Under the pieces are notes generated by a model. It made no database searches, was not told the origin of the DNA, and saw only the letters and a program-made list of their open reading frames with translations. Positions 709 to 13,146 of a DNA stretch of 13,333 nucleotides are shown piece after piece. Position 1 is the first letter of the stretch. Each line of letters begins with the position of its first letter. A program made the translations under genes and the position numbers. This stretch comes from Octopus sinensis (taxonomy: Eukaryota): the NCBI RefSeq assembly GCF_006345805.1, contig NW_021826172.1, forward strand, positions 1-13,333. The letters are read 5' to 3'.

Positions 709-749
709 ATGATCATGCTTATATATATATATATATATATTATATTTTC

Positions 750-795
<46 letters not shown>

Positions 796-1592: not shown

Positions 1593-2066
1593 CATTTTGT
1601 GTTTGATAAGATTGCCGGAACTGTTGGCTGGAGACAGTGATCTGAACCCGTGCGATAACATACATAGTATAGTATTAGCAATGCTTCAGTTACACTTAAG
1701 TTCAAGAGATACTTCATATGAATAACTCAATGGCTCCTCTACTAAGACAAGTACTAAGACATTCGGCGCGTATTATTAGCTTAAAATCTAGGTTTAAAAT
1801 TGAAACAGTAATGTTTTAGTATGTCTATGTATAACAAGTTTAGTAAGTTCCCATAATTTATACATCGATTCGAAAAGATAACGTTAGTCTATTCTCTGCA
1901 TAGCAAAGTTTGCTATATGGAAAAGAAGATTCTACAATGTATGCGATAGTGCGGAAATGCAAACATAAGTAATATTATGTATGATTCCAACAGACAATTA
2001 CACGCATATGAACACAAAATGACACACATATATACATGTGTATGTGTGTGTATTTTTGTATGTATG

Positions 2067-2092
<26 letters not shown>
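2067..2092. repeat. (TA)n microsatellite abutting the left end of the fold-back
   Basis: Pure TA run running directly into TATAAAATATTATTAGAGAC, the start of the left arm. Confidence 0.95.
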
Positions 2093-2098
<6 letters not shown>

Positions 2099-2183
2099 TA
2101 TTAGAGACAAAACCACTATTTTGCAAAACAAACAGGAAAAACTTAATCAATACATAAATTTTAATAAATAGTCAAAATAACCG

Positions 2184-2226
2184 CCACTACAATTGTTTCT
2201 TGTCTTGATCGACAATCTTCAGGTGG
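2184..2226 (-). ncRNA. Minimal type I hammerhead ribozyme motif (copy 1)
   Basis: Minus strand reads CCAC-CUGAAGA-UUGUC-GAUCAA-GACAA-GAAA-C-AAUU-G-UA/GUGG: core CUGANGA, 5-bp stem II, GAAA, short stem III, GUA cleavage triplet, 4-bp stem I (CCAC/GUGG). Predicted cut between 2188 and 2187. Confidence 0.85.
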
Positions 2227-2316
2227 ACTTCCAATCTAAAATATCAATATTTTAAAATATAAAAATAATAATTTTTAAAATAATTAAAGTATGAATGAAA
2301 AAAAATATAAATAATA

Positions 2317-2434
2317 ATCCATATATAACCTATATATAATCCATATATAATCAATATATAAACAATATATAAACTAAAATAAACCTATCAACAATTAAAT
2401 ATAAAATATAAAATATAAAATATAAAATATAAAA
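2317..2434. repeat. Short tandem repeats inside the arm: ~11-12-mer (ATCCATATATA-like) and (TATAAAA)n
   Basis: About five degenerate 11-12-nt units at ~2317-2373 and about five TATAAAA units at ~2398-2434. Mirrored in the right arm at ~7094-7210. Confidence 0.8.
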
Positions 2435-2665
2435 CAAAACAAAAAAATAATAATTATATAATAATAAACTATATATACACCCATACACATATACCTAATT
2501 ATATATAACCATATCTAACTACATACACTAAATCACAACCCTATATATATATCCCTATACATACACATAAAAACGTCTAGGCAACTATAAATAATAAAAT
2601 AGCTAAATACTTCAACACAATACTTATTCATACTCCCACACACACACACATACAACCCACATTCA

Positions 2666-4257
2666 CGCTCTAGAAAAACGGACATCACTTAAAATTATGA
2701 ACGGAGAAATGGAATAAATGGAATTAAAAATTATATTCACTTGGTAAAACGAACACTACTTAAAAATTATGAATGAAACAATGCAATAAAACAACAGACA
2801 TCGCAAATAGACACAAATTACTACGAATTCCTTAACAAACCTACCATGATAAACCAAAACTATAAAAACATATAATGATAAAATCTCCCTTTACTAAACT
2901 CTATAACATACCTATATAGCAATCCCCCTAACCTAAACATTCACACACAAATACACACACGTAAACCACACACCCACGACATATACAAATACCCACACCA
3001 CTTACACATACCTATACATACATATAAACCTCAACATATACTCCAAAAACCCACTCAACCCCACACAGACAAATAAACACAAAAATTATGAATGGATTCT
3101 TTTATAAAACTACCATGATAAGCTAAAACTCACAAAACATAAATGATAAAACCTCCCTTTACTAAACACTATAACATACTTATATAGCAATCCCTTTAAC
3201 CTATACATTCACACACAAATACACACACGTAAACCACACACCCATAACAAATACAAACACCCACCCCACTCACACACACCCACAAGTACATATAAGCCTC
3301 AACATATACACCAAACAAAATTACTTTACCAAGGAACTTAACATATGTATAAAAAGTATAACCGCTCTGGAAACGAACATCTTTTAAAATAATGAATGGA
3401 GAAATGGAATAAATGGAATTAAAAATAATATTCACGTGGCAAAACGAACACCACTCAAAAATTATGAATGAAACAATGTAATAAAAAACATCAACATCGA
3501 AAATAGACAAATTACCACGAATTCCCTAAAAAAACCATGATAAACCAAAACTCTTAAAAACATATAACGATAAAATCTCCCTTTGCTAAACTCTATAAAC
3601 AAACCTATATAGCAATCCCCCAAACAAACATTCACACACAAAAACACACACGTAAACCACAGACCCACGACTTATACACATACCTATACTAACTTATAAA
3701 CCTCAATATACACCAAAAACCCACTCCCCTCCCCCACAGACAAATTAACACATACATCCCAAAACCTAAATAACAAACCCATATACACATTCACACACAA
3801 AACACACACACACGCAAAACACACACACACAAACAGATACATATACTCCCTCACATATACGCATATACATACTCACTAAACTCGATATATACAACAATAT
3901 TTACACACCCACACTCATACAGATAAATAATTATACAACTAAAAACTCACACACAATCTCATATACATAAACACTCCAAAAAAAAACAACATTAAATACA
4001 TCGTAATTAACCAGAATATCAAAAATAACAATATGACATAAGGAGAAATAAAATACATACTTACAAGTCAGTTTCAAATTATGAAGTGAAATTAAATTCT
4101 TAGCCGTTAAAAAACCAAACCAAAATTACGTTACCATAGAAATATAACTTATGTAAAAAAAGAATACGCGCCATGGAAAGTAAACGTCATTTAAAATTAT
4201 GAATGGAGAAATAGAATAAATGGAACTAAAAACTATAGCCACGTGGCAAACCAACAC
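2666..4257 (+). repeat. Hierarchical diverged direct subrepeats (mirrored in the right arm)
   Basis: Module A (..AAAATTATGAAYGGAGAAATRGAATAAATGGAA..) at ~2666, ~3363, ~4167. Module B (CCATGATAA..CTCCCTTT..TATATAGCAATCCC) at ~2843, ~3113, ~3535. Each B is followed by CATTCACACACAAA..ACACACGTAAACCAC and a CCTCAAYATA.. module. Confidence 0.9.
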
Positions 4258-5273
4258 ATGCAATTCCAGGTACGCGCGAATTGCATGTGAGCCTCAACAT
4301 ATACACCAAACGGCCACTCCCGCCTTATACGGACAAATAAACACATACATCCCCAAAAATGGGCGTAATCCCACTCACACCAATCATATGTATACAATTA
4401 TACACACTAGAATAATACATAACTAACCCAAATATACAGAACATATTAAAAATCACCAACAAACCACCATCACAAATGAAACCTACACCCATACAATGAC
4501 AAAACTCCCCCCTCTATACCCAATTACACCCACATAGCAATCCCAATATATTCATCCATACATGGACGCACGTGCGTGAAGCACATGCACACAATAAATA
4601 CGTACAACCCCCCAATACACACTCATATACATACGTATCAAGCTCGACATCCACAGCAATACGCTTACACCCATCACACCCAGATGGGTGAATTGCACAA
4701 CCAGTGAACGCACACACACACGTGTGCGTATTTTGATTGTGCAACTCGCCCATATGCATGTATGTATGCGGGCGCGATTACATTGTTGCACATATCGAGC
4801 CCAACTAGCATGCATATGTACATGTGAGGGGGTACACGTACATGCCGTGCGCGTGTACCCCCTGCATTTATACCCGTGCGTGAATATACACATGGAGACT
4901 ACCACACAGGTACAAATGTGTATAGTAATGGGAGCCCCATCACTACACTCAATGTATACTCTCACCCATCCGCACGGATTGAAAGCGAATCTCCGGTGTA
5001 TATGTTGAGGCTTATATGTAGCGCTGTGGAGTTGAACGTCGTTGAAATTGTGAATGAATGGGTGGAGTTGGGAATTGTAACGGGTGGTGGGCTAGCGTTG
5101 CTTGGAATTGGGAATGGAATAGTGTAGTAGTAAGGCAGGCATCGAGAATAGATTTGGGTTACTGCAAGTTGTTTGTTAGAGAGCTGCTAAGATGAGCTAA
5201 AGCTCATAATTGTACATAATTTATTATGGTAGTTTTATTAAAGAATCCATTCATAATAAATTTTTTTTAAGTA
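4258..5273. other. 1016-bp spacer/loop of the fold-back, CpG- and hairpin-rich
   Basis: Not symmetric overall. Contains several local stem-loops, fragments of arm modules and the point where strand skew reverses. Confidence 0.85.
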
Positions 5274-7431
5274 GTGTTGGTTTGCCACGTGGATATAGTT
5301 TTTAGTTCCATTTATTCTATTTCTCCATTCATAATTTTAAATGACGTTTACTTTCCATGGCGCGTATTCTTTTTTTACATAAGTTATATTTCTATGGTAA
5401 CGTAATTTTGGTTTGGTTTTTTTAACGGCTAAGAATTTAATTTCACTTCATAATTTGAAACTGACTTGTAAGTATGTATTTTATTTCTCCTTATGTCATA
5501 TTGTTATTTTTGATATTCTGGTTAATTACGATGTATTAATGTTGTTTTTTTTATTGGAGTGTTTATGTATATGAGATTGTGTGTGAGTTTTTAGTTGTAT
5601 AATTATTTATCTGTATGAGTGTGGGTGTGTAAATATTGTTGTATATATCGAGTTTAGTGAGTATGTATATGCGTATATGTGAGGGAGTATATGTATCTGT
5701 GGTGTGTGTGTTTTGCGTGTGTGTGTGTTGTGTGTGTGTGAATGTGTATATGGGTTTGTTATTTAGGTTTTGGGATGTATGTGTAATTTGTCTGTGTGGG
5801 GGGGAGTGGTTTTTGGTGTATATTGAGGTTTATAAGTTAGTATAGGTATGTGTATAAGTCGTGGGTCTGTGGTTTACGTGTGTGTTTTTTGTGTGTGAAT
5901 GTTTAGGTAGGGGGATTGCTATATAGGTTTGTTATAGAGTTTAGCAAAGGGAGATTTTATCGTTATATGTTTTTAAGAGTTTTGGTTTATCATGGTTTTT
6001 TTTAGGGAATTCGTGGTAATTTGTCTATTTTCGATGTTGGTTGTTTTATTACATTGTTTCATTCATAATTTTGAGTGGTGTTCGTTTTGCCACGTGAATA
6101 TTATTTTTAATTCCATTTATTCCATTTCTCCATTCATTATTTAAAAGATGTTCGTTTCCAGAGCGGTTATACTTTTTATACATATGTTAAGTTCCTTGGT
6201 AAAGTAATTTGTTTTTGGTGTATATGTTGAGGCTTATATGTACTTGTGGGTGTGTGTGTGAGTGGGGTGGGTGTTTGTATTTGTTATGGGTGTGTGGTTT
6301 ACGTGTGTGTATTTGTGTGTGAATGTATAGGTTAAAGGGATTGCTATATAAGTATGTTATAGTGTTTAGTAAAGGGAGGTTTTATCATTTATGTTTTGTG
6401 AGTTTTAGCTTATCATGGTAGTTTTATAAAAGAATCCATTCATAATTTTTGTGTTTATTTGTCTGTGTGGGGTTGAGTGGGTTTTGGAGTATATGTTGAG
6501 GTTATATGTATGTATAGGTATGTGTAAGTGGTGTGGGTATTTGTATATGTCGTGGGTGTGTGGTTTACGTGTGTGTATTTGTGTGTGAATGTTTAGGTTA
6601 GGGGGATTGCTATATAGGTATGTTATAGAGTTTAGTAAAGGGAGATTTTATCATTATATGTTTTTATGAGTTTTGGTTTATCATGGTAGGTTTGTTAAGG
6701 AATTCGTAGTAATTTGTGTCTATTTGCGATGTCTGTTGTTTTATTGCATTGTTTCATTCATAATTTTTAAGTAGTGTTCGTTTTACCAAGTGAATATAAT
6801 TTTTAATTCCATTTATTCATTTCTCCGTTCATATTTTAAGTGATGTCCGTTTTTCTAGAGCGTGAATGTGGGTTGTATGTGTGTGTGTGTGGGAGTATGA
6901 ATAAGTATTGTGTTGAAGTATTTAGCTATTTTATTTATTTATAGTTGCCTAGACGTTTTTATGTGTATGTATAGGGATATATATAGGGGTGTGATTTAGT
7001 GTATGTAGTTAGATATGGTATATATAATTAGGTATATGTGTGTTGGGTGTATATATAGTTTATTATTATATAATTATTATTTTTTTGTTTTGTTTTATAT
7101 TTTATATTTTATATTTTATATTTTATATTTAATTGTTGATAGGTTTATTTTAGTTTATATATTGTTTATATATTGATTTATATGGATTATATATAGGTTA
7201 TATATGGATTATATATTTATATTTTTTCATTCATACTTTAATTATTTTAAAATTATTATTTTTATATTTTAAATATTGATATTTTAGATTGGAAGTCCAC
7301 CTGAAGATTGTCGATCAAGACAAGAAACAATTGTAGTGGCGGTTTTTTGACTATTTATTAAATTTTATGTATGATTAAGTCTTTCCTGTTTGTTTTGCAA
7401 AATAGTGGTTTGTCTCTAATAATATTTTATA
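5274..7431 (-). repeat. Right arm of long inverted repeat (2158 bp)
   Basis: Reverse complement of 2089-4257; 5274-5510 vs 4021-4257 showed only one substitution by eye. Confidence 0.97.
7297..7339 (+). ncRNA. Minimal type I hammerhead ribozyme motif (copy 2)
   Basis: CCAC 7297-7300, CTGAAGA 7301-7307, stem II TTGTC 7308-7312 / GACAA 7319-7323, GAAA 7324-7327, C-AATT-G 7328-7333, TA 7334-7335, GTGG 7336-7339. Predicted cleavage after 7335. Identical to copy 1. Confidence 0.85.
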
Positions 7432-7442
7432 ATATTTTACTA

Positions 7443-7500
7443 TAAAATTGGATTTATCCTAAATCTGATTTTTTCCCTGTAAATTTGGATTATTCCCTAA
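7443..7500 (+). repeat. Three degenerate ~17-21 bp direct repeats just outside the right arm
   Basis: TAAAATTGGATTTATCC / TAAATCTGATTTTTTCCCTG / TAAATTTGGATTATTCCCTAA. Confidence 0.65.
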
Positions 7501-7562
7501 TATTTATATTATATATATTATATATATATATATAAATACATACATATATATACATATATATT

Positions 7563-7597
<35 letters not shown>

Positions 7598-7700
7598 ATA
7601 TTAGTATGTATTGTGTATGTAATATGTTTATATGTATATATGTATGTAAATGTATATGAATGTATGAGTATATATGTGTGTATGGGTGTGTACATGTTGA
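7501..7700. repeat. Degenerate (TA)n/(TATG)n/(TG)n microsatellite
   Basis: Direct inspection. Confidence 0.9.
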
Positions 7701-8209: not shown

Positions 8210-8429
8210 GAAGGTGTGCTGACAGGTTCGTTAGCACGCTGGAGAGGATACTTAGCGGCATTTCGTCTGTATTTGTGTTCTGATTTCAAATTCCTCCGAG
8301 GTCAAGTTTGCTTTCACCGTCTCGGGGATCGATGAAATAAGTACCAGTTGAATACTGGGGTGGGTGAAATCGATTATTCTCTTTCATCACAAAATTCCAG
8401 GCCTTCTGCGTCTAATTGGAGAATTATTA
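8210..8429 (+). mobile_element. Diverged tRNA-derived SINE-like element
   Basis: Head (GTTCGTTAGCACGC..CTTAGCGGCATTTCGTCTG), decayed B-box (TTTCAAATTCC) and body (CCGAGGTCAAGTTTGCTTTCA..AAATAAGTACCAGTT..ACTGGGG) are homologous to the copies at 8734-9307. Confidence 0.75.
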
Positions 8430-8441
8430 CAAAGAACATTT

Positions 8442-8511
8442 AAGCCAACGAGGTGGCAGAATCGTTACTACGACGACAGGAATGCTTTGCCATATTTCGT
8501 CTGTATTTACG
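8442..8511 (+). mobile_element. 5' fragment of the same SINE family
   Basis: A-box-like TGGCAGAATCG followed by AATGCTTTGCCATATTTCGTCTG, matching the heads at 8210 and 9156. Confidence 0.6.
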
Positions 8512-8733
8512 CCACTCTGCGATCGAATTCTGCTGATGTACCACTACAGAATCTGCACTCAACCATTTTGAATGTAAATCATGTATATTTTTCATTAAGT
8601 CATTTATTATATTTTTCGAGTTATTCTCTTGTTGCTATCGCTGTCGTCGTTGCTGTTGCTATCTTTGCTATTATTGTCGCTGCTATTCAATTTCGTGTGG
8701 GCGCCTGCATATTGTTGATAATTCTCACGCCTT

Positions 8734-9123
8734 CACGCCAGGCGAAATGCTTAGCCGTAATTCATCTGCCGCTACTTTCTGAGTTCAAATTCCGCCGAGG
8801 TCAACTTTGCCTTTCATCTTTTCGGAGTCGATTAAATAAGTACCAGTTACGTACTGGGGTCGATATAATCGACTTAATCCGTTTGTCTGTCCTTGTGTGT
8901 CCTCTCTGTGTTTAGCCTCGTGTGGGTAGTAAACAAATAAGTAATTCATCTGCCGCTAGGTTCTGAGTTCAAATTCCGCCGAGGTCGACTTTGCCTTTCA
9001 TCCTTTCGGGGTCGATTAAATAAGTACCAGTTACGCTCTGGGGTCGATATAATCGACTCAATCCGTTTGTCTGTTCTTGCTTGTCCTTTCTATGATTAGC
9101 CCCTTGTAGGCAATAAAGAAATA
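8734..9123 (+). mobile_element. 5'-truncated SINE with a tandemly duplicated 184-bp body
   Basis: Units at 8757-8940 and 8941-9123 both begin GTAATTCATCTGCCGCTA and carry the B-box GAGTTCAAATTCC. Flanked by GATAATTCTCACG at 8717-8729 and 9124-9136. Confidence 0.85.
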
Positions 9124-9155
9124 GATAATTCTCACGGCCTCATTATTTCCAGTAC

Positions 9156-9307
9156 AAAGACGGCGAGCTGGCGGAGTCGTTAGCACATTAGACAAAATAT
9201 TTAGCAGCGTTTCTCCCAAGCTCTTCATGTTCTGGCTCCAAATTATCCTTCCATCCTTTCGATAAAATAAAGTGCTTGGGAAGAACTGAGAGTCGATAAA
9301 ATCGACT
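9156..9307 (+). mobile_element. Diverged, internally deleted copy of the same SINE family
   Basis: A-box TGGCGGAGTCG in AAAGACGGCGAGCTGGCGGAGTCGTTAGCAC, then TTCCATCCTTTCGATAAAATAAAGT and GTCGATAAAATCGACT, matching the body of the 184-bp unit. Confidence 0.7.
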
Positions 9308-9783: not shown

Positions 9784-9797
9784 TAATAATAATGATG

Positions 9798-9831
<34 letters not shown>

Positions 9832-9869
9832 CAACAACAATAATAATAATCATAATAACAATAACAATC

Positions 9870-9936
<67 letters not shown>

Positions 9937-9979
9937 TAATAATGATAATAATAATGATAGTAATAAGATAATAATAATG

Positions 9980-10018
<39 letters not shown>

Positions 10019-10039
10019 GTAATAATAATGATAATAATA

Positions 10040-10085
<46 letters not shown>
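9784..10085. repeat. Long (AAT)n microsatellite with AAC/GAT/CAT variants
   Basis: About 300 bp; source of the poly-N/I/Y/L ORFs. Confidence 0.97.
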
Positions 10086-10327: not shown

Positions 10328-10447
10328 ATTTCTTATGAGGAATATCCTTTGCTTGATGTTATATACTGGTCCTGTACTCGACCAGGTGATCCATCGGTTT
10401 TTCTCTGATGCGTGTCGATGGAGCATGGTATGGCAAAGCAAAGCGGA

Positions 10448-10530
10448 GAAGAAGAAGAAGAAGAAGAAGAAGAAGAAGAAGAAGAAGAAGAAGAAGAAGA
10501 AGAAGAAGAAGAAGAAGAAGAAGAAGAAGA
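10448..10530. repeat. Pure (GAA)n microsatellite
   Basis: Uninterrupted GAA run of ~83 nt. Confidence 0.97.
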
Positions 10531-10843: not shown

Positions 10844-10844
<1 letters not shown>

Positions 10845-10931
<87 letters not shown>

Positions 10932-11096
10932 GTTTCATTTTTTGTTAATCACTCATTCTCATTTAATTGTATATATTTTAATTGTTTATTATTCATTCGA
11001 TACCCTGACCCCAACGTTTGTTTTGTTGTCCCCATATTGTCCCCTCTTTTTTCTCAACCTTATGGTGAATAAAGAAATACTCTCTCTCTAGCTCGC

Positions 11097-11140
<44 letters not shown>
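10845..11140. repeat. Two (CT)n tracts (10845-10930; 11082-11140 with (CTCG)n)
   Basis: Direct inspection. Confidence 0.9.
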
Positions 11141-11559: not shown

Positions 11560-12426
11560 TATGTGTCTATATATTTATTTATCCACCAATCAATTTAGCT
11601 ATACACGTCTATATACGTGTATGTATCTATCTGGTGTATATATCTGTCTATTTATGTTTTTATCTAGCTCCCTGAATTTACAGACACAAGCATACAGACA
11701 CACACTCACACAAAAAATACACATACATATACACATATAAACACACAATAATGCGTATTTATACACGCACAGGGGAGGCTTGTTAGATAGATATATATTT
11801 CTCCAAGAATGTTTATATGTATATGTTCGTGTGTGTCTTAGTATTATGTATGTATGTGTGTATGTATGTAGGTGCATATATACAAATTATAACTGCTTAC
11901 CTAAATATCTAGCTATCAATCTCTTTGTAAGTATATCTATCTACCCACCCATAAATTTATCTGTATATCTATATCTATGAATCTATCTATCTATTTATCT
12001 GTATGTATGTATGTATGTATGTATGTATATATATATATATATACGTTTAAATATTTGTTGTGCAAGATTTTTTATGTATATATATATATACATTTATATA
12101 TATATACATATATATATAAATATATGTACACACATATATATATATATATACATGCATGTATACATATAGATATAAATTTACACATACGTATACGTGTATA
12201 CATATGCATATATAATGTATATGTACGTTATATTCACATATATATATATATATACGTGTGTATATATATGTATATATGCATATACATATATATTGTATAT
12301 AAATGCACACGCTCAGGAATGGCTTGGTTAGATAGATATGCGTGTATGAATATTTCTGTGTATGTGTGTATGTGTCTATCGGTGTCTCTGTGTGTGTGTG
12401 TGCGTGTGTGTGAATGTACGTGTGTA

Positions 12427-12472
<46 letters not shown>
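11560..12472. repeat. Degenerate (TA)/(TATG)/(TATC)/(CA)/(TG) low-complexity region
   Basis: Direct inspection; ends in a near-pure (TG)n at ~12421-12472. Confidence 0.85.
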
Positions 12473-12475
<3 letters not shown>

Positions 12476-12740
12476 ATCTACGTAAATATATGACTGATTA
12501 GAATGACAGACCCTGTTTTGATACATGATTTCGATCAACGCCAATAGAAGCCATTTAACTTTTCCTCCTTGTATCAAACAAAACATATTTTGCTTGGATA
12601 ATGGAACGACCATGCCGTCGCAACCTTCCACATATGAATATGCATGCGCACGCTTATATACAATTATATATTTTTTCATTCGGGCACACATTAACGCACA
12701 TACACAAAACTATAGACACCTACTCAACCATAAAATTGTA

Positions 12741-13115
12741 TACACACACACAAACACACACACACACATACACACACATACACACAAACACGCACACACA
12801 CATACATACACACACTAACACACACAAACATACATACACACAATCACGCACACACACACATACACACTCACACACACCAACACACAGAGAAACACACCAC
12901 ACACACACACATACACAACCACACACACACACAAACACACACGCACACAAACACACACACCAATCACACACACACACAACACAAACACACACACCACACA
13001 AACCACACACACACACAAACACACACACACACACACAAACACGCGCAGCACACACACACACACACAAACACATACACGCACACACACACACATACACACA
13101 CACACACACATACAT

Positions 13116-13146
<31 letters not shown>

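What the first reader, a model, noticed from the sequence alone, without database searches (positions are those of the whole stretch)
2184..7339. Two identical, outward-facing hammerhead ribozyme motifs cap a 5.3 kb fold-back
Seen: a 43-nt sequence with every element of a minimal type I hammerhead (stem I CCAC/GUGG, CUGAAGA, 5-bp stem II, GAAA, stem III, GUA cleavage site). It lies at 7297-7339 (+) and 2184-2226 (-), each ~95 nt from the outer arm end, and the two copies are identical. Established: minimal type I hammerheads with very short stem III mark the pseudo-LTRs of Penelope-like retroelements and metazoan non-LTR retrozymes, and Penelope pLTRs can be inverted. Inference: this is a large ORF-less Penelope-like/retrozyme-like element whose outward transcripts get self-cleaved 3' ends and which would need an RT supplied in trans. 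Caveat: pair 10.1-11.1 is U-A rather than the usual G-C, which may reduce activity.
Basis: partly seen in the sequence, partly recalled or inferred. Interest (0 to 1): 0.9.

Follow-up and report, generated by a model that had tools for sequence, protein, structure and literature searches.

The report
Head-to-head Penelope-type retroelement copies in octopus DNA
The 5.3 kb fold-back is most likely two inverted copies of a protein-less, Penelope-type mobile element in an octopus genome, each with the family's usual hammerhead ribozyme motif near its outer end; this layout is already known for these elements.

Summary
An identical 43-nt type I hammerhead (HHR) motif lies at 7297-7339(+) and 2184-2226(-), about 95 nt inside the outer ends of a 5.34 kb fold-back. 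The high-identity arms are 2089-4257 and 5274-7431. In 200 Mb of composition-matched random sequence, a motif this good appeared once, and never with the 8-nt palindromic helix III.

No Rfam hammerhead model matches it. That says little, because Rfam also missed the hammerheads in two genuine Penelope-like element (PLE) loci I fetched as controls.

Three of the four control loci (weevil, lamprey, spider) carry an inverted 5'-truncated copy lying head-to-head with the main copy. Two of them carry identical outward-facing hammerheads. The predicted cut site lies 55-91 nt from the element's 3' end in the controls, against 96-99 nt here. The weevil locus also shows a tail at one end only and an A/T-rich target.

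The window comes from an octopus-like genome, judged by a SINE 92% identical to Octopus vulgaris. Recently active Penelope families are reported in that species. The element has no RT, endonuclease or transposase domain in any frame, so it is non-autonomous. It is not a tandem retrozyme.

I could not obtain other copies, so covariation, copy number and the RT partner remain untested. The 10.1-11.1 pair is U-A rather than G-C. Verdict: a new member of a known kind, of low to moderate interest.

The parts
2089..4257 (-). Left copy of the element (inverted). This is the high-identity arm, with its 3' end at 2089 facing outward.
   Evidence: Aligns to rc(5274-7431) with 9 substitutions and 38 small indels. 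The exact common end was found by comparing the termini.
2184..2226 (-). Hammerhead motif of the left copy. The cut is predicted between 2188 and 2187, 99 nt from the arm end.
   Evidence: Exact 43-mer. Found by the descriptor scan.
5274..7431 (+). Right copy of the element. This is the high-identity arm, with its 3' end at 7431 facing outward. The sense strand is G/T-rich.
   Evidence: Strand skew profile.
7297..7339 (+). Hammerhead motif of the right copy: helix I 7297-7300/7336-7339, core CUGAAGA 7301-7307, helix II 7308-7312/7319-7323, GAA 7324-7326, palindromic helix III plus loop ACAAUUGU 7327-7334, and A17 at 7335 (cut after 7335).
   Evidence: A two-copy cofold of -22.0 kcal/mol forms the double hammerhead with an 8-bp intermolecular helix III.
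7340..7431 (+). 3'-terminal segment between the ribozyme and the element end (mirror: 2089-2183). By analogy with PAc, this is the region where the reverse transcriptase would start copying.
   Evidence: The cut-to-end distance is 96 nt here, against 55, 56 and 91 nt in three genuine PLE loci. In PAc, my calculation from the paper's coordinates gives 82-89 nt: cut site 26 nt after the start codon, RT start 111-118 nt into the ORF (PMC11167929).
7040..7296 (+). Very A/T-rich region (11-16% GC) upstream of the ribozyme, with 11-nt and 5-nt short repeats (mirror: 2227-2483).
   Evidence: Its fold is not unusual (z = +1.2).
5845..6852 (+). Internal non-coding tandem repeats. A unit of about 690 nt occurs at 5845-6157 and 6536-6852 (89% identical). 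A sub-unit of about 269 nt occurs at 6213-6461 and 6482-6726 (85% identical). The same repeats are mirrored in the left arm.
   Evidence: Self-BLAST and repeat families D14 and D20.
4258..5273 (.). Central junction region. 4284-4358 holds repeat-unit pieces in the left-copy orientation, and 4995-5273 holds pieces in the right-copy orientation. The core 4359-4994 is richer in GC and weakly palindromic around about 4718.
   Evidence: local score 101, against 42 +/- 6 for shuffles; arms 4676-4715 and 4722-4761, 75% complementary.
7432..7500 (+). A 69-nt non-repetitive stretch between the right arm end and the (TA)n tract. It could be a one-sided PLE 'tail' or just flanking DNA.
   Evidence: It has no match elsewhere in the window. 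A one-sided 30-nt tail is seen in the weevil control locus L020.
2057..2088 (.). Left target flank: GTAT/(TA)n microsatellite abutting the element end. A similar tract resumes on the right at about 7500-7657.

Best explanation
The fold-back is one composite insertion of a non-autonomous, protein-less retroelement of the Penelope-like (PLE) kind, in an octopus-type genome. Two copies lie head-to-head with their 3' ends pointing outward.

Each copy carries a 3' module. It consists of an A/T-rich stretch, a minimal type I hammerhead, and about 96 nt of terminal sequence that ends where reverse transcription would have started. The rest of each copy is non-coding, G/T-rich tandem repeat.

Inferred mechanism:
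1. An RT/GIY-YIG protein from an autonomous octopus PLE binds the element's RNA through the 3' module.
2. It nicks both strands of an A/T-rich (TA)n target.
3. It primes cDNA synthesis from both nicks, so two copies grow inward and are joined in the middle.

The hammerhead is a family motif, not something the fold-back evolved. With a 2-3 bp helix III that is an 8-nt palindrome, it could cleave after A7335 only as a dimer or with protein help. Here each transcript would carry only one sense copy.

Shown directly: the motif, the anatomy, the lack of ORFs, and the match to genuine PLE loci. Inferred: trans-mobilisation, dual-strand priming and any catalysis.
For: - Motif: all core positions and three helices are present, and chance matches are rare (1 as good in 200 Mb, none palindromic).
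- Anatomy: the two copies are inverted with hammerheads facing outward, 96 and 99 nt from sharply defined ends. The flanks are different on each side and are (TA)n-rich.
- Controls: in genuine PLE loci fetched through RT homologues, the weevil locus L020 has identical outward hammerheads. It also has an inverted 5'-truncated copy (99.3% identical), a 30-nt tail at one end only, an 11-nt A/T-rich target duplication, and a cut-to-end distance of 56 nt. The lamprey locus L021 has head-to-head copies (99.4% identical) with identical outward hammerheads and a cut-to-end distance of 91 nt. The spider locus L023 has a 76-nt inverted fragment and a distance of 55 nt.
- Literature: inverted 5'-truncated copies, one-sided tails and a microsatellite target bias (with (TA)n reported for Naiad elements) are described in PMC8557442. 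Short palindromic helix III in invertebrate PLE hammerheads, and pairs of minimal HHRs on opposite strands, are described in PMC4209133. The PAc protein nicks and extends both target strands at A/T-rich DNA and starts reverse transcription internally; by my calculation from the paper's coordinates, that start is 82-89 nt past the hammerhead cut site (PMC11167929).
- Host: the SINE is 92% identical to Octopus vulgaris. That species is reported to have 31 recently active Penelope-like families (PMC13282606).
- No coding capacity: no Pfam domain in any of six frames, and tblastn with a PLE protein gives a best E-value of 1.
Against: - This is a single locus. I could not retrieve any other copy or an octopus PLE, so family conservation, covariation and the shared 3' end with an RT-encoding partner are untested.
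- The 10.1-11.1 pair is U-A, whereas G-C is highly conserved in canonical and PLE hammerheads (PMC4209133), including all three control hammerheads.
- The monomer fold is not more stable than shuffled sequence (z = -0.5), and wider context favours other folds.
- No target-site duplication can be read in the (TA)n flanks.
- Identity between the copies drops abruptly from 99.6% to about 56% at 4257/5274. A single dual-priming event from one RNA does not predict this.
- There is no pseudo-LTR.
Confidence: 0.7

Rival explanations
1. It is a fold-back-type DNA transposon or a plain inverted duplication. Under this reading the long inverted arms are terminal inverted repeats built of tandem sub-repeats around a central loop, as in Drosophila FB or sea-urchin TU elements, and the hammerhead-like string is a coincidence.
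For: - The 2.2 kb arms contain tandem sub-repeats of about 269 and 690 nt, plus short sub-terminal repeats.
- There is a central non-identical region.
- There is no ORF.
- The (TA)n flanks are compatible with a TA-type target.
- No Rfam hammerhead match was found.
Against: - A motif this good is expected about 0.005 times per Mb of random sequence, with none palindromic in 200 Mb. Landing about 95 nt from the end and pointing outward is exactly the PLE position.
- The Rfam negative result is uninformative, because Rfam also misses the hammerheads of the genuine PLE loci L020 and L021.
- There are no recognisable transposase remnants and no readable fixed-length target duplication.
Confidence: 0.15
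2. The palindrome is an assembly artefact from fold-back or chimeric long reads. Under this reading the genome holds only one copy of the element, and the hammerhead motif would still be real.
For: The arms differ mainly by 1-nt indels (38 indel events against 9 substitutions, 22 of them in homopolymer context). This is a typical long-read error pattern. By contrast, the lamprey PLE arms differ by 8 substitutions and 2 gaps.
Against: - The two outer flanks are unrelated to each other.
- The structure is internal to the contig.
- The centre is 1 kb of non-identical sequence rather than a sharp turn-around.
- The right end has an extra 69 nt before the (TA)n tract.
Confidence: 0.07
3. It is an active non-LTR retrozyme locus. 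Under this reading the hammerheads excise a unit-length RNA that circularises and is copied back into DNA.
For: - Type I hammerhead with a 2-bp helix III and a tetraloop, as described for invertebrate retrozymes (PMC7229834).
- The motif's minimum free energy of -6.5 kcal/mol passes the -5 kcal/mol 'active' filter used in 10.64898/2026.07.22.740005.
Against: - There is only one hammerhead per copy, and the two are on opposite strands, so no transcript carries two sense ribozymes.
- There is no 170-400 nt tandem unit with a ribozyme in each repeat.
- The 3' module has no unusually stable fold.
Confidence: 0.03

Closest known systems
Penelope-like elements (Penelope/Poseidon-type PLEs) and their composite tandem/inverted insertions
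   Same: - Outward-facing hammerhead near each 3' end.
- An inverted copy joined head-to-head.
- A/T-rich microsatellite target.
- A possible one-sided tail.
- A cut-to-end distance of about 96 nt, against 55-91 nt in the control loci L020, L021 and L023, and consistent with PMC8557442 and PMC11167929.
   Different: - No RT/GIY-YIG ORF or remnant.
- No pseudo-LTR.
- The interior is G/T-rich tandem repeat.
- The hammerhead has a looped palindromic helix III (ACAAUUGU) and a U10.1-A11.1 pair. The controls instead have the GAAACGUY minimal form with a bulged nucleotide and a G10.1-C11.1 pair.
Metazoan non-LTR retrozymes (tandem 170-400 nt repeats with type I hammerheads; PMC7229834, 10.64898/2026.07.22.740005)
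   Same: - Protein-less and of low GC content.
- Type I hammerhead with a 2-bp helix III and a palindromic tetraloop.
- Proposed dependence on PLE enzymes.
   Different: - One ribozyme per 2.2-2.7 kb copy, not one per short tandem unit.
- The two copies are inverted, so double self-cleavage and circular RNA are not expected.
Fold-back DNA transposons (Drosophila FB, sea-urchin TU; from my own knowledge)
   Same: Kilobase-long inverted arms built partly of tandem sub-repeats around a central loop, with no coding capacity in most copies.
   Different: Those elements carry no ribozyme motif and have fixed-length target duplications. Here the ends carry an outward hammerhead at the PLE position, and no target duplication can be read.

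Membership tests
Hammerhead ribozyme, type I | Conserved core: C3 U4 G5 A6 N7 G8 A9, G12 A13 A14, the A15.1-U16.1 pair, and H17 (not G) | tested here: met
   CUGAAGA ... GAA A ... U A at 7301-7335.
Hammerhead ribozyme, type I | Three helices around the core, with helix I open-ended | tested here: met
   Helix I is 4 bp, helix II is 5 bp and helix III is 2-3 bp. Only 1 of 200 Mb-equivalent random hits was as good.
Hammerhead ribozyme, type I | G10.1-C11.1 closing pair of helix II | tested here: not met
   The pair is U-A here. It is G-C in all three control PLE hammerheads. A U-U mismatch at this position is tolerated in the axolotl HHR_Amex2 motif (PMC7229834).
Hammerhead ribozyme, type I | Match to the curated covariance models (Rfam hammerhead families) | tested here: not met
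   No hit at gathering score or at E <= 10. The same search also misses the hammerheads of the genuine PLE loci L020 and L021, so this test has little power.
Hammerhead ribozyme, type I | Compensatory changes in helices among homologues | not testable with these tools
   No homologous copy could be retrieved.
Hammerhead ribozyme, type I | Site-specific self-cleavage | not testable with these tools
   Only folding could be run. The monomer hammerhead fold is -5.4 kcal/mol, against a minimum free energy of -6.5. The two-copy cofold of -22.0 kcal/mol adopts the double hammerhead.
Penelope-like element (autonomous) | A single ORF with an RT domain and a GIY-YIG endonuclease | tested here: not met
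   No Pfam domain in any of six frames of 4258-7500. tblastn with the Poseidon_Ac protein against the window gives a best E-value of 1.
Penelope-like element (insertion anatomy, including non-autonomous derivatives) | Hammerhead motif in the 3'/pLTR module, tens of nt upstream of the genomic 3' end | tested here: met
   96 and 99 nt here, against 55, 56 and 91 nt in L023, L020 and L021.
Penelope-like element (insertion anatomy, including non-autonomous derivatives) | An adjacent inverted 5'-truncated copy giving inverted repeats with 3' ends outward | tested here: met
   Arms 2089-4257 and 5274-7431. The same arrangement occurs in L020, L021 and L023 and is described in PMC8557442.
Penelope-like element (insertion anatomy, including non-autonomous derivatives) | Pseudo-LTR formed by partial tandem duplication | tested here: not met
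   There is no direct repeat of the terminal 400 nt within the element.
Penelope-like element (insertion anatomy, including non-autonomous derivatives) | A 30-40 nt tail at one end, and an A/T-rich or microsatellite target | tested here: inconclusive
   (TA)n abuts the left end and resumes after 7500. The stretch 7432-7500 could be tail or flank.
Penelope-like element (insertion anatomy, including non-autonomous derivatives) | 3' module shared with an RT-encoding PLE of the same genome | not testable with these tools
   The RT search returned 4581 hits, and none of the 120 listed was from octopus. No DNA search of octopus genomes is available.
Non-LTR retrozyme | At least two consecutive tandem units (170-400 nt), each with a complete type I hammerhead | tested here: not met
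   There are only two motifs in the window, on opposite strands and 5.1 kb apart.
Fold-back DNA transposon | Long terminal inverted repeats with internal tandem sub-repeats | tested here: met
Fold-back DNA transposon | Fixed-length target-site duplication flanking the inverted repeats | tested here: inconclusive
   The flanks are (TA)n-like, so only trivial 2-4 nt matches are possible.

The most novel reading that the evidence does not exclude
This would be a previously undescribed class of large (about 2.7 kb), satellite-filled, protein-less parasite of octopus Penelope elements. It would keep only the 3' recognition module, with a variant hammerhead (U10.1-A11.1 pair and an 8-nt palindromic helix III). 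Its head-to-head insertions would create kilobase hairpin loci able to feed small-RNA silencing of the family.
Probability: 0.4. Interest if true: 0.35.

Novelty: new member of a known kind. Interest (0 to 1): 0.22.

Why it matters
If confirmed, it adds a cephalopod example of a non-autonomous element that borrows Penelope-type enzymes. It is neither a short tandem retrozyme nor a SINE. It also adds a hammerhead variant with a non-G-C 10.1-11.1 pair.

Octopus genomes are reported to hold recently active Penelope families (PMC13282606). Such parasites and the long hairpins they create could matter for repeat annotation, assembly quality and small-RNA production.

It does not change the current understanding of hammerheads or PLEs. 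The outward-facing pair of ribozymes is the standard by-product of how these elements insert.

Tried and rejected
- Rfam at gathering score and at E <= 10 around the motif gave no hammerhead. I judged this uninformative after the control.
- Pattern scans for other copies failed. IMG/VR gave 0 hits. JGI metagenomes gave 18 loci, all chance matches with no helices or flank homology. GTDB genomes gave 0 hits for both the motif and the 3' terminus.
- I tried to reach other copies through spurious ORFs of the element, with 0 hits. The protein database evidently holds only annotated proteins for eukaryotes.
- The SINE ORF identified the host lineage, but its 20 kb locus holds no copy of the element.
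- The RT search with the Poseidon_Ac core listed no octopus protein. I used its hits as positive controls instead.
- A simple chimeric-read palindrome was rejected, because the flanks differ and the centre is not a sharp turn.
- A viroid-like or retrozyme-like stable fold of the 3' module was rejected (z = +1.2).
- A CUGAUGA...GAAA string at 1001-962(-) was rejected as chance, because it has no helices.
- A full-text search for the SINE sequence found nothing.

Full report
**Observation.** The 43-nt string CCACCTGAAGATTGTCGATCAAGACAAGAAACAATTGTAGTGG occurs at 7297-7339 on the + strand and at 2184-2226 on the - strand. It occurs nowhere else in the window, even allowing three mismatches. It parses as a type I hammerhead (HHR):
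- helix I: CCAC/GUGG
- core: CUGAAGA
- helix II: UUGUC/GACAA, 5 bp, closed by GAUCAA
- GAA
- helix III: A15.1-U16.1 and C15.2-G16.2, capped by AAUU
- A17, with cleavage predicted after 7335

The segment ACAAUUGU is an 8-nt palindrome. A co-fold of two copies (-22.0 kcal/mol, against 2 x -6.5 for monomers) adopts the classical double hammerhead with an intermolecular 8-bp helix III.

To judge chance, I scanned 200 Mb of first-order Markov sequence with the window's composition. This gave 10 hits to a relaxed descriptor, one hit as good as this motif, and none with a palindromic helix III. The motif is therefore very unlikely to arise by chance in a 13 kb window. A few such hits would still be expected in a whole animal genome, so context matters.

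The fact that the two copies are identical carries no weight. The arms differ only about once per 46 nt.

**The fold-back.** Arms 2089-4257 and 5274-7431 are reverse complements, with 9 substitutions (99.6% identity) and 38 small indels. Of those indels, 32 are single bases and 22 lie in homopolymer context. The outer ends are sharp.
- On the left, the arm abuts a (TA)n tract.
- On the right, 69 nt of unique sequence (7432-7500) precede a similar (TA)n tract.
- The outer flanks are unrelated to each other, which argues against a chimeric-read palindrome.

Strand composition flips near 4700-4900. The hammerhead-sense strand of each copy is G/T-rich. Each arm contains non-coding tandem repeats of about 690 and 269 nt.

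The central 1016 nt is not simply unique:
- 4284-4358 carries repeat-unit pieces in the left-copy orientation.
- 4995-5273 carries pieces in the right-copy orientation.
- The GC-richer core shows weak inverted symmetry around about 4718 (local score 101, against 42 +/- 6 for shuffles; 40-nt arms 75% complementary).

The two copies therefore meet head-to-head near 4718. Their inner ~500 nt are far more diverged than the outer 2.17 kb, and I cannot explain this.

**Coding capacity.** No Pfam domain is found in any of the six frames of 4258-7500. A tblastn search with the Poseidon_Ac RT-endonuclease protein (supplement of PMC11167929) finds only noise in the window (best E = 1). The element encodes no protein.

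**Host.** The window is 32.6% GC and dense in microsatellites. A SINE at 8229-9123 is 92% identical to Octopus vulgaris chromosome OX597819.1. An ORF across that SINE matches only a hypothetical O. vulgaris protein. The source is therefore an octopus or a close relative. O. vulgaris is reported to hold 31 recently active Penelope-like families with 336 insertions (PMC13282606), so RT-encoding partners plausibly exist.

**Rfam and a positive control.** No Rfam hammerhead model matches the motif, either at gathering score or at E <= 10. To see what that means, I fetched genuine Penelope-like element (PLE) loci through RT homologues.
- **Weevil locus L020.** The ORF at 4001-6286 is followed by a minimal hammerhead at 6308(+). 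An identical hammerhead sits at 3309(-), facing outward. An inverted 5'-truncated copy (3219-3762 = rc 5854-6398, 99.3% identical) lies head-to-head with the main copy. A 30-nt tail is present at the left end only. The whole insertion is flanked by an 11-nt A/T-rich duplication, TATTTTGTGTT. The cut site is 56 nt from the 3' end, or 86 nt with the tail.
- **Lamprey locus L021.** Copies lie head-to-head (1612-3380 = rc 4782-6550, 99.4% identical, 8 mismatches and 2 gaps). Identical outward hammerheads sit at 1737(-) and 6425(+). The cut site is 91 nt from the end.
- **Spider locus L023.** There is a hammerhead at 6010(+), a 76-nt inverted fragment upstream, and 55 nt from cut to end.
- **Lizard locus L022.** The fourth locus showed neither feature.

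Rfam at E <= 10 reports no hammerhead in L020 or L021. The negative result for the window therefore says little.

**Comparison.** The window shows the same anatomy as these controls:
- two inverted copies with 3' ends outward
- identical outward hammerheads 96 and 99 nt from the ends
- an A/T-rich microsatellite target
- possibly a one-sided tail

The literature describes the same features. PLE insertions are highly 5'-truncated and often carry an inverted 5'-truncated copy at the 5' side. They often have a 30-40 nt tail at one end and favour microsatellite targets, with (TA)n reported for Naiad elements (PMC8557442). Metazoan PLE hammerheads have a short helix I and a palindromic 15.2-16.2 pair and loop 3. 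Variants with a small palindromic helix III occur in flies, rotifers, shrimps and mosquitos. Pairs of minimal HHRs on opposite strands were also noted (PMC4209133).

The purified PAc protein nicks and extends both strands of A/T-rich targets. It starts reverse transcription at internal sites 111-118 nt into the ORF, while the hammerhead cut lies 26 nt after the start codon. By my calculation, that puts the start 82-89 nt past the cut. The PAc hammerhead needs protein to cleave and is dispensable for insertion in vitro (PMC11167929). Extension from both strands gives a ready mechanism for head-to-head copies.

**What differs.**
- There is no RT/endonuclease ORF and no pseudo-LTR.
- The interior is satellite-like.
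- The hammerhead has a looped palindromic helix III rather than the GAAACGUY minimal form of the controls. Its 10.1-11.1 pair is U-A, where G-C is highly conserved (PMC4209133). A U-U mismatch at that position is tolerated in an axolotl retrozyme ribozyme with modest activity (PMC7229834). The deviation therefore lowers my confidence in catalysis but does not exclude it.
- It is not a retrozyme as defined, because that requires tandem units each carrying a hammerhead (10.64898/2026.07.22.740005).
- Its 3' module has no unusually stable fold.

**Limits.** No other copy of the element and no octopus PLE could be retrieved. The following therefore remain untested:
- copy number
- the 5'-truncation profile
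- covariation in the helices
- the identity of the tail
- the link to an RT partner

The excess of indels between the arms probably reflects long-read assembly error, since the lamprey arms show the opposite pattern. This too is unverified.

**Verdict.** It over-reads the pair of ribozymes as a special cap, and the retrozyme label does not fit. This is a new member of a known kind, and the outward-facing identical hammerheads are the ordinary signature of composite PLE insertions. My confidence is 0.7 for this explanation, 0.15 for a fold-back DNA element with a chance motif, 0.07 for an assembly artefact of the palindrome, and 0.03 for an active retrozyme.

Noticed in passing
window 8229-8376, 8734-9123, about 9140-9300: Several copies of an octopus SINE, including a 184-nt tandem pair. 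They are 92% identical to Octopus vulgaris OX597819.1. ARAGORN finds no intact tRNA. An ORF across the SINE matches only an annotated 'hypothetical predicted protein' of O. vulgaris, which suggests that annotation includes SINE-derived gene models.
   Followed up: partly
window 4258-5273: Identity between the two copies drops abruptly from 99.6% to about 56% at 4257/5274. The centre is richer in GC (45-50%) and weakly palindromic around about 4718. Possible causes are arm-to-arm gene conversion, two different templates, or rearrangement of the palindrome centre. None is resolved.
   Followed up: partly
window 2089-4257 vs 5274-7431: The arms differ by 38 indels against 9 substitutions, mostly single A or T bases. 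This looks like residual long-read assembly error. The lamprey PLE arms in L021 show 8 substitutions against 2 gaps.
   Followed up: partly
window 720-792, 1165-1490, 7500-7657, 9784-10083, 10447-10530, 10844-11140, 12339-13146: Very dense microsatellites: (TA)n, (AGA)n, about 100 copies of TAA, (CT)n, and a (TG)n tract facing an (AC)n tract that together score as a loose inverted repeat.
   Followed up: no
L021 9369-9466 (Petromyzon marinus CM110130.1): A near-perfect 98-nt hairpin made of two PLE 3'-terminal fragments joined in inverted orientation. It scores as several miRNA families in Rfam, but below their gathering thresholds.
   Followed up: no
L020 3189-3860 and 6341-6398 (Sitophilus oryzae PPTJ02000576.1): A textbook composite PLE insertion: an inverted truncated copy with a 30-nt tail, an 88-nt mini-copy, a full copy without a tail, and an 11-nt target duplication. 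The NCBI annotation calls the inverted ORF fragment a separate 125-aa gene.
   Followed up: partly
window 1001-962 (-): A CUGAUGA...GAAA string without helices I-III. It is a chance match to the core boxes only.
   Followed up: yes
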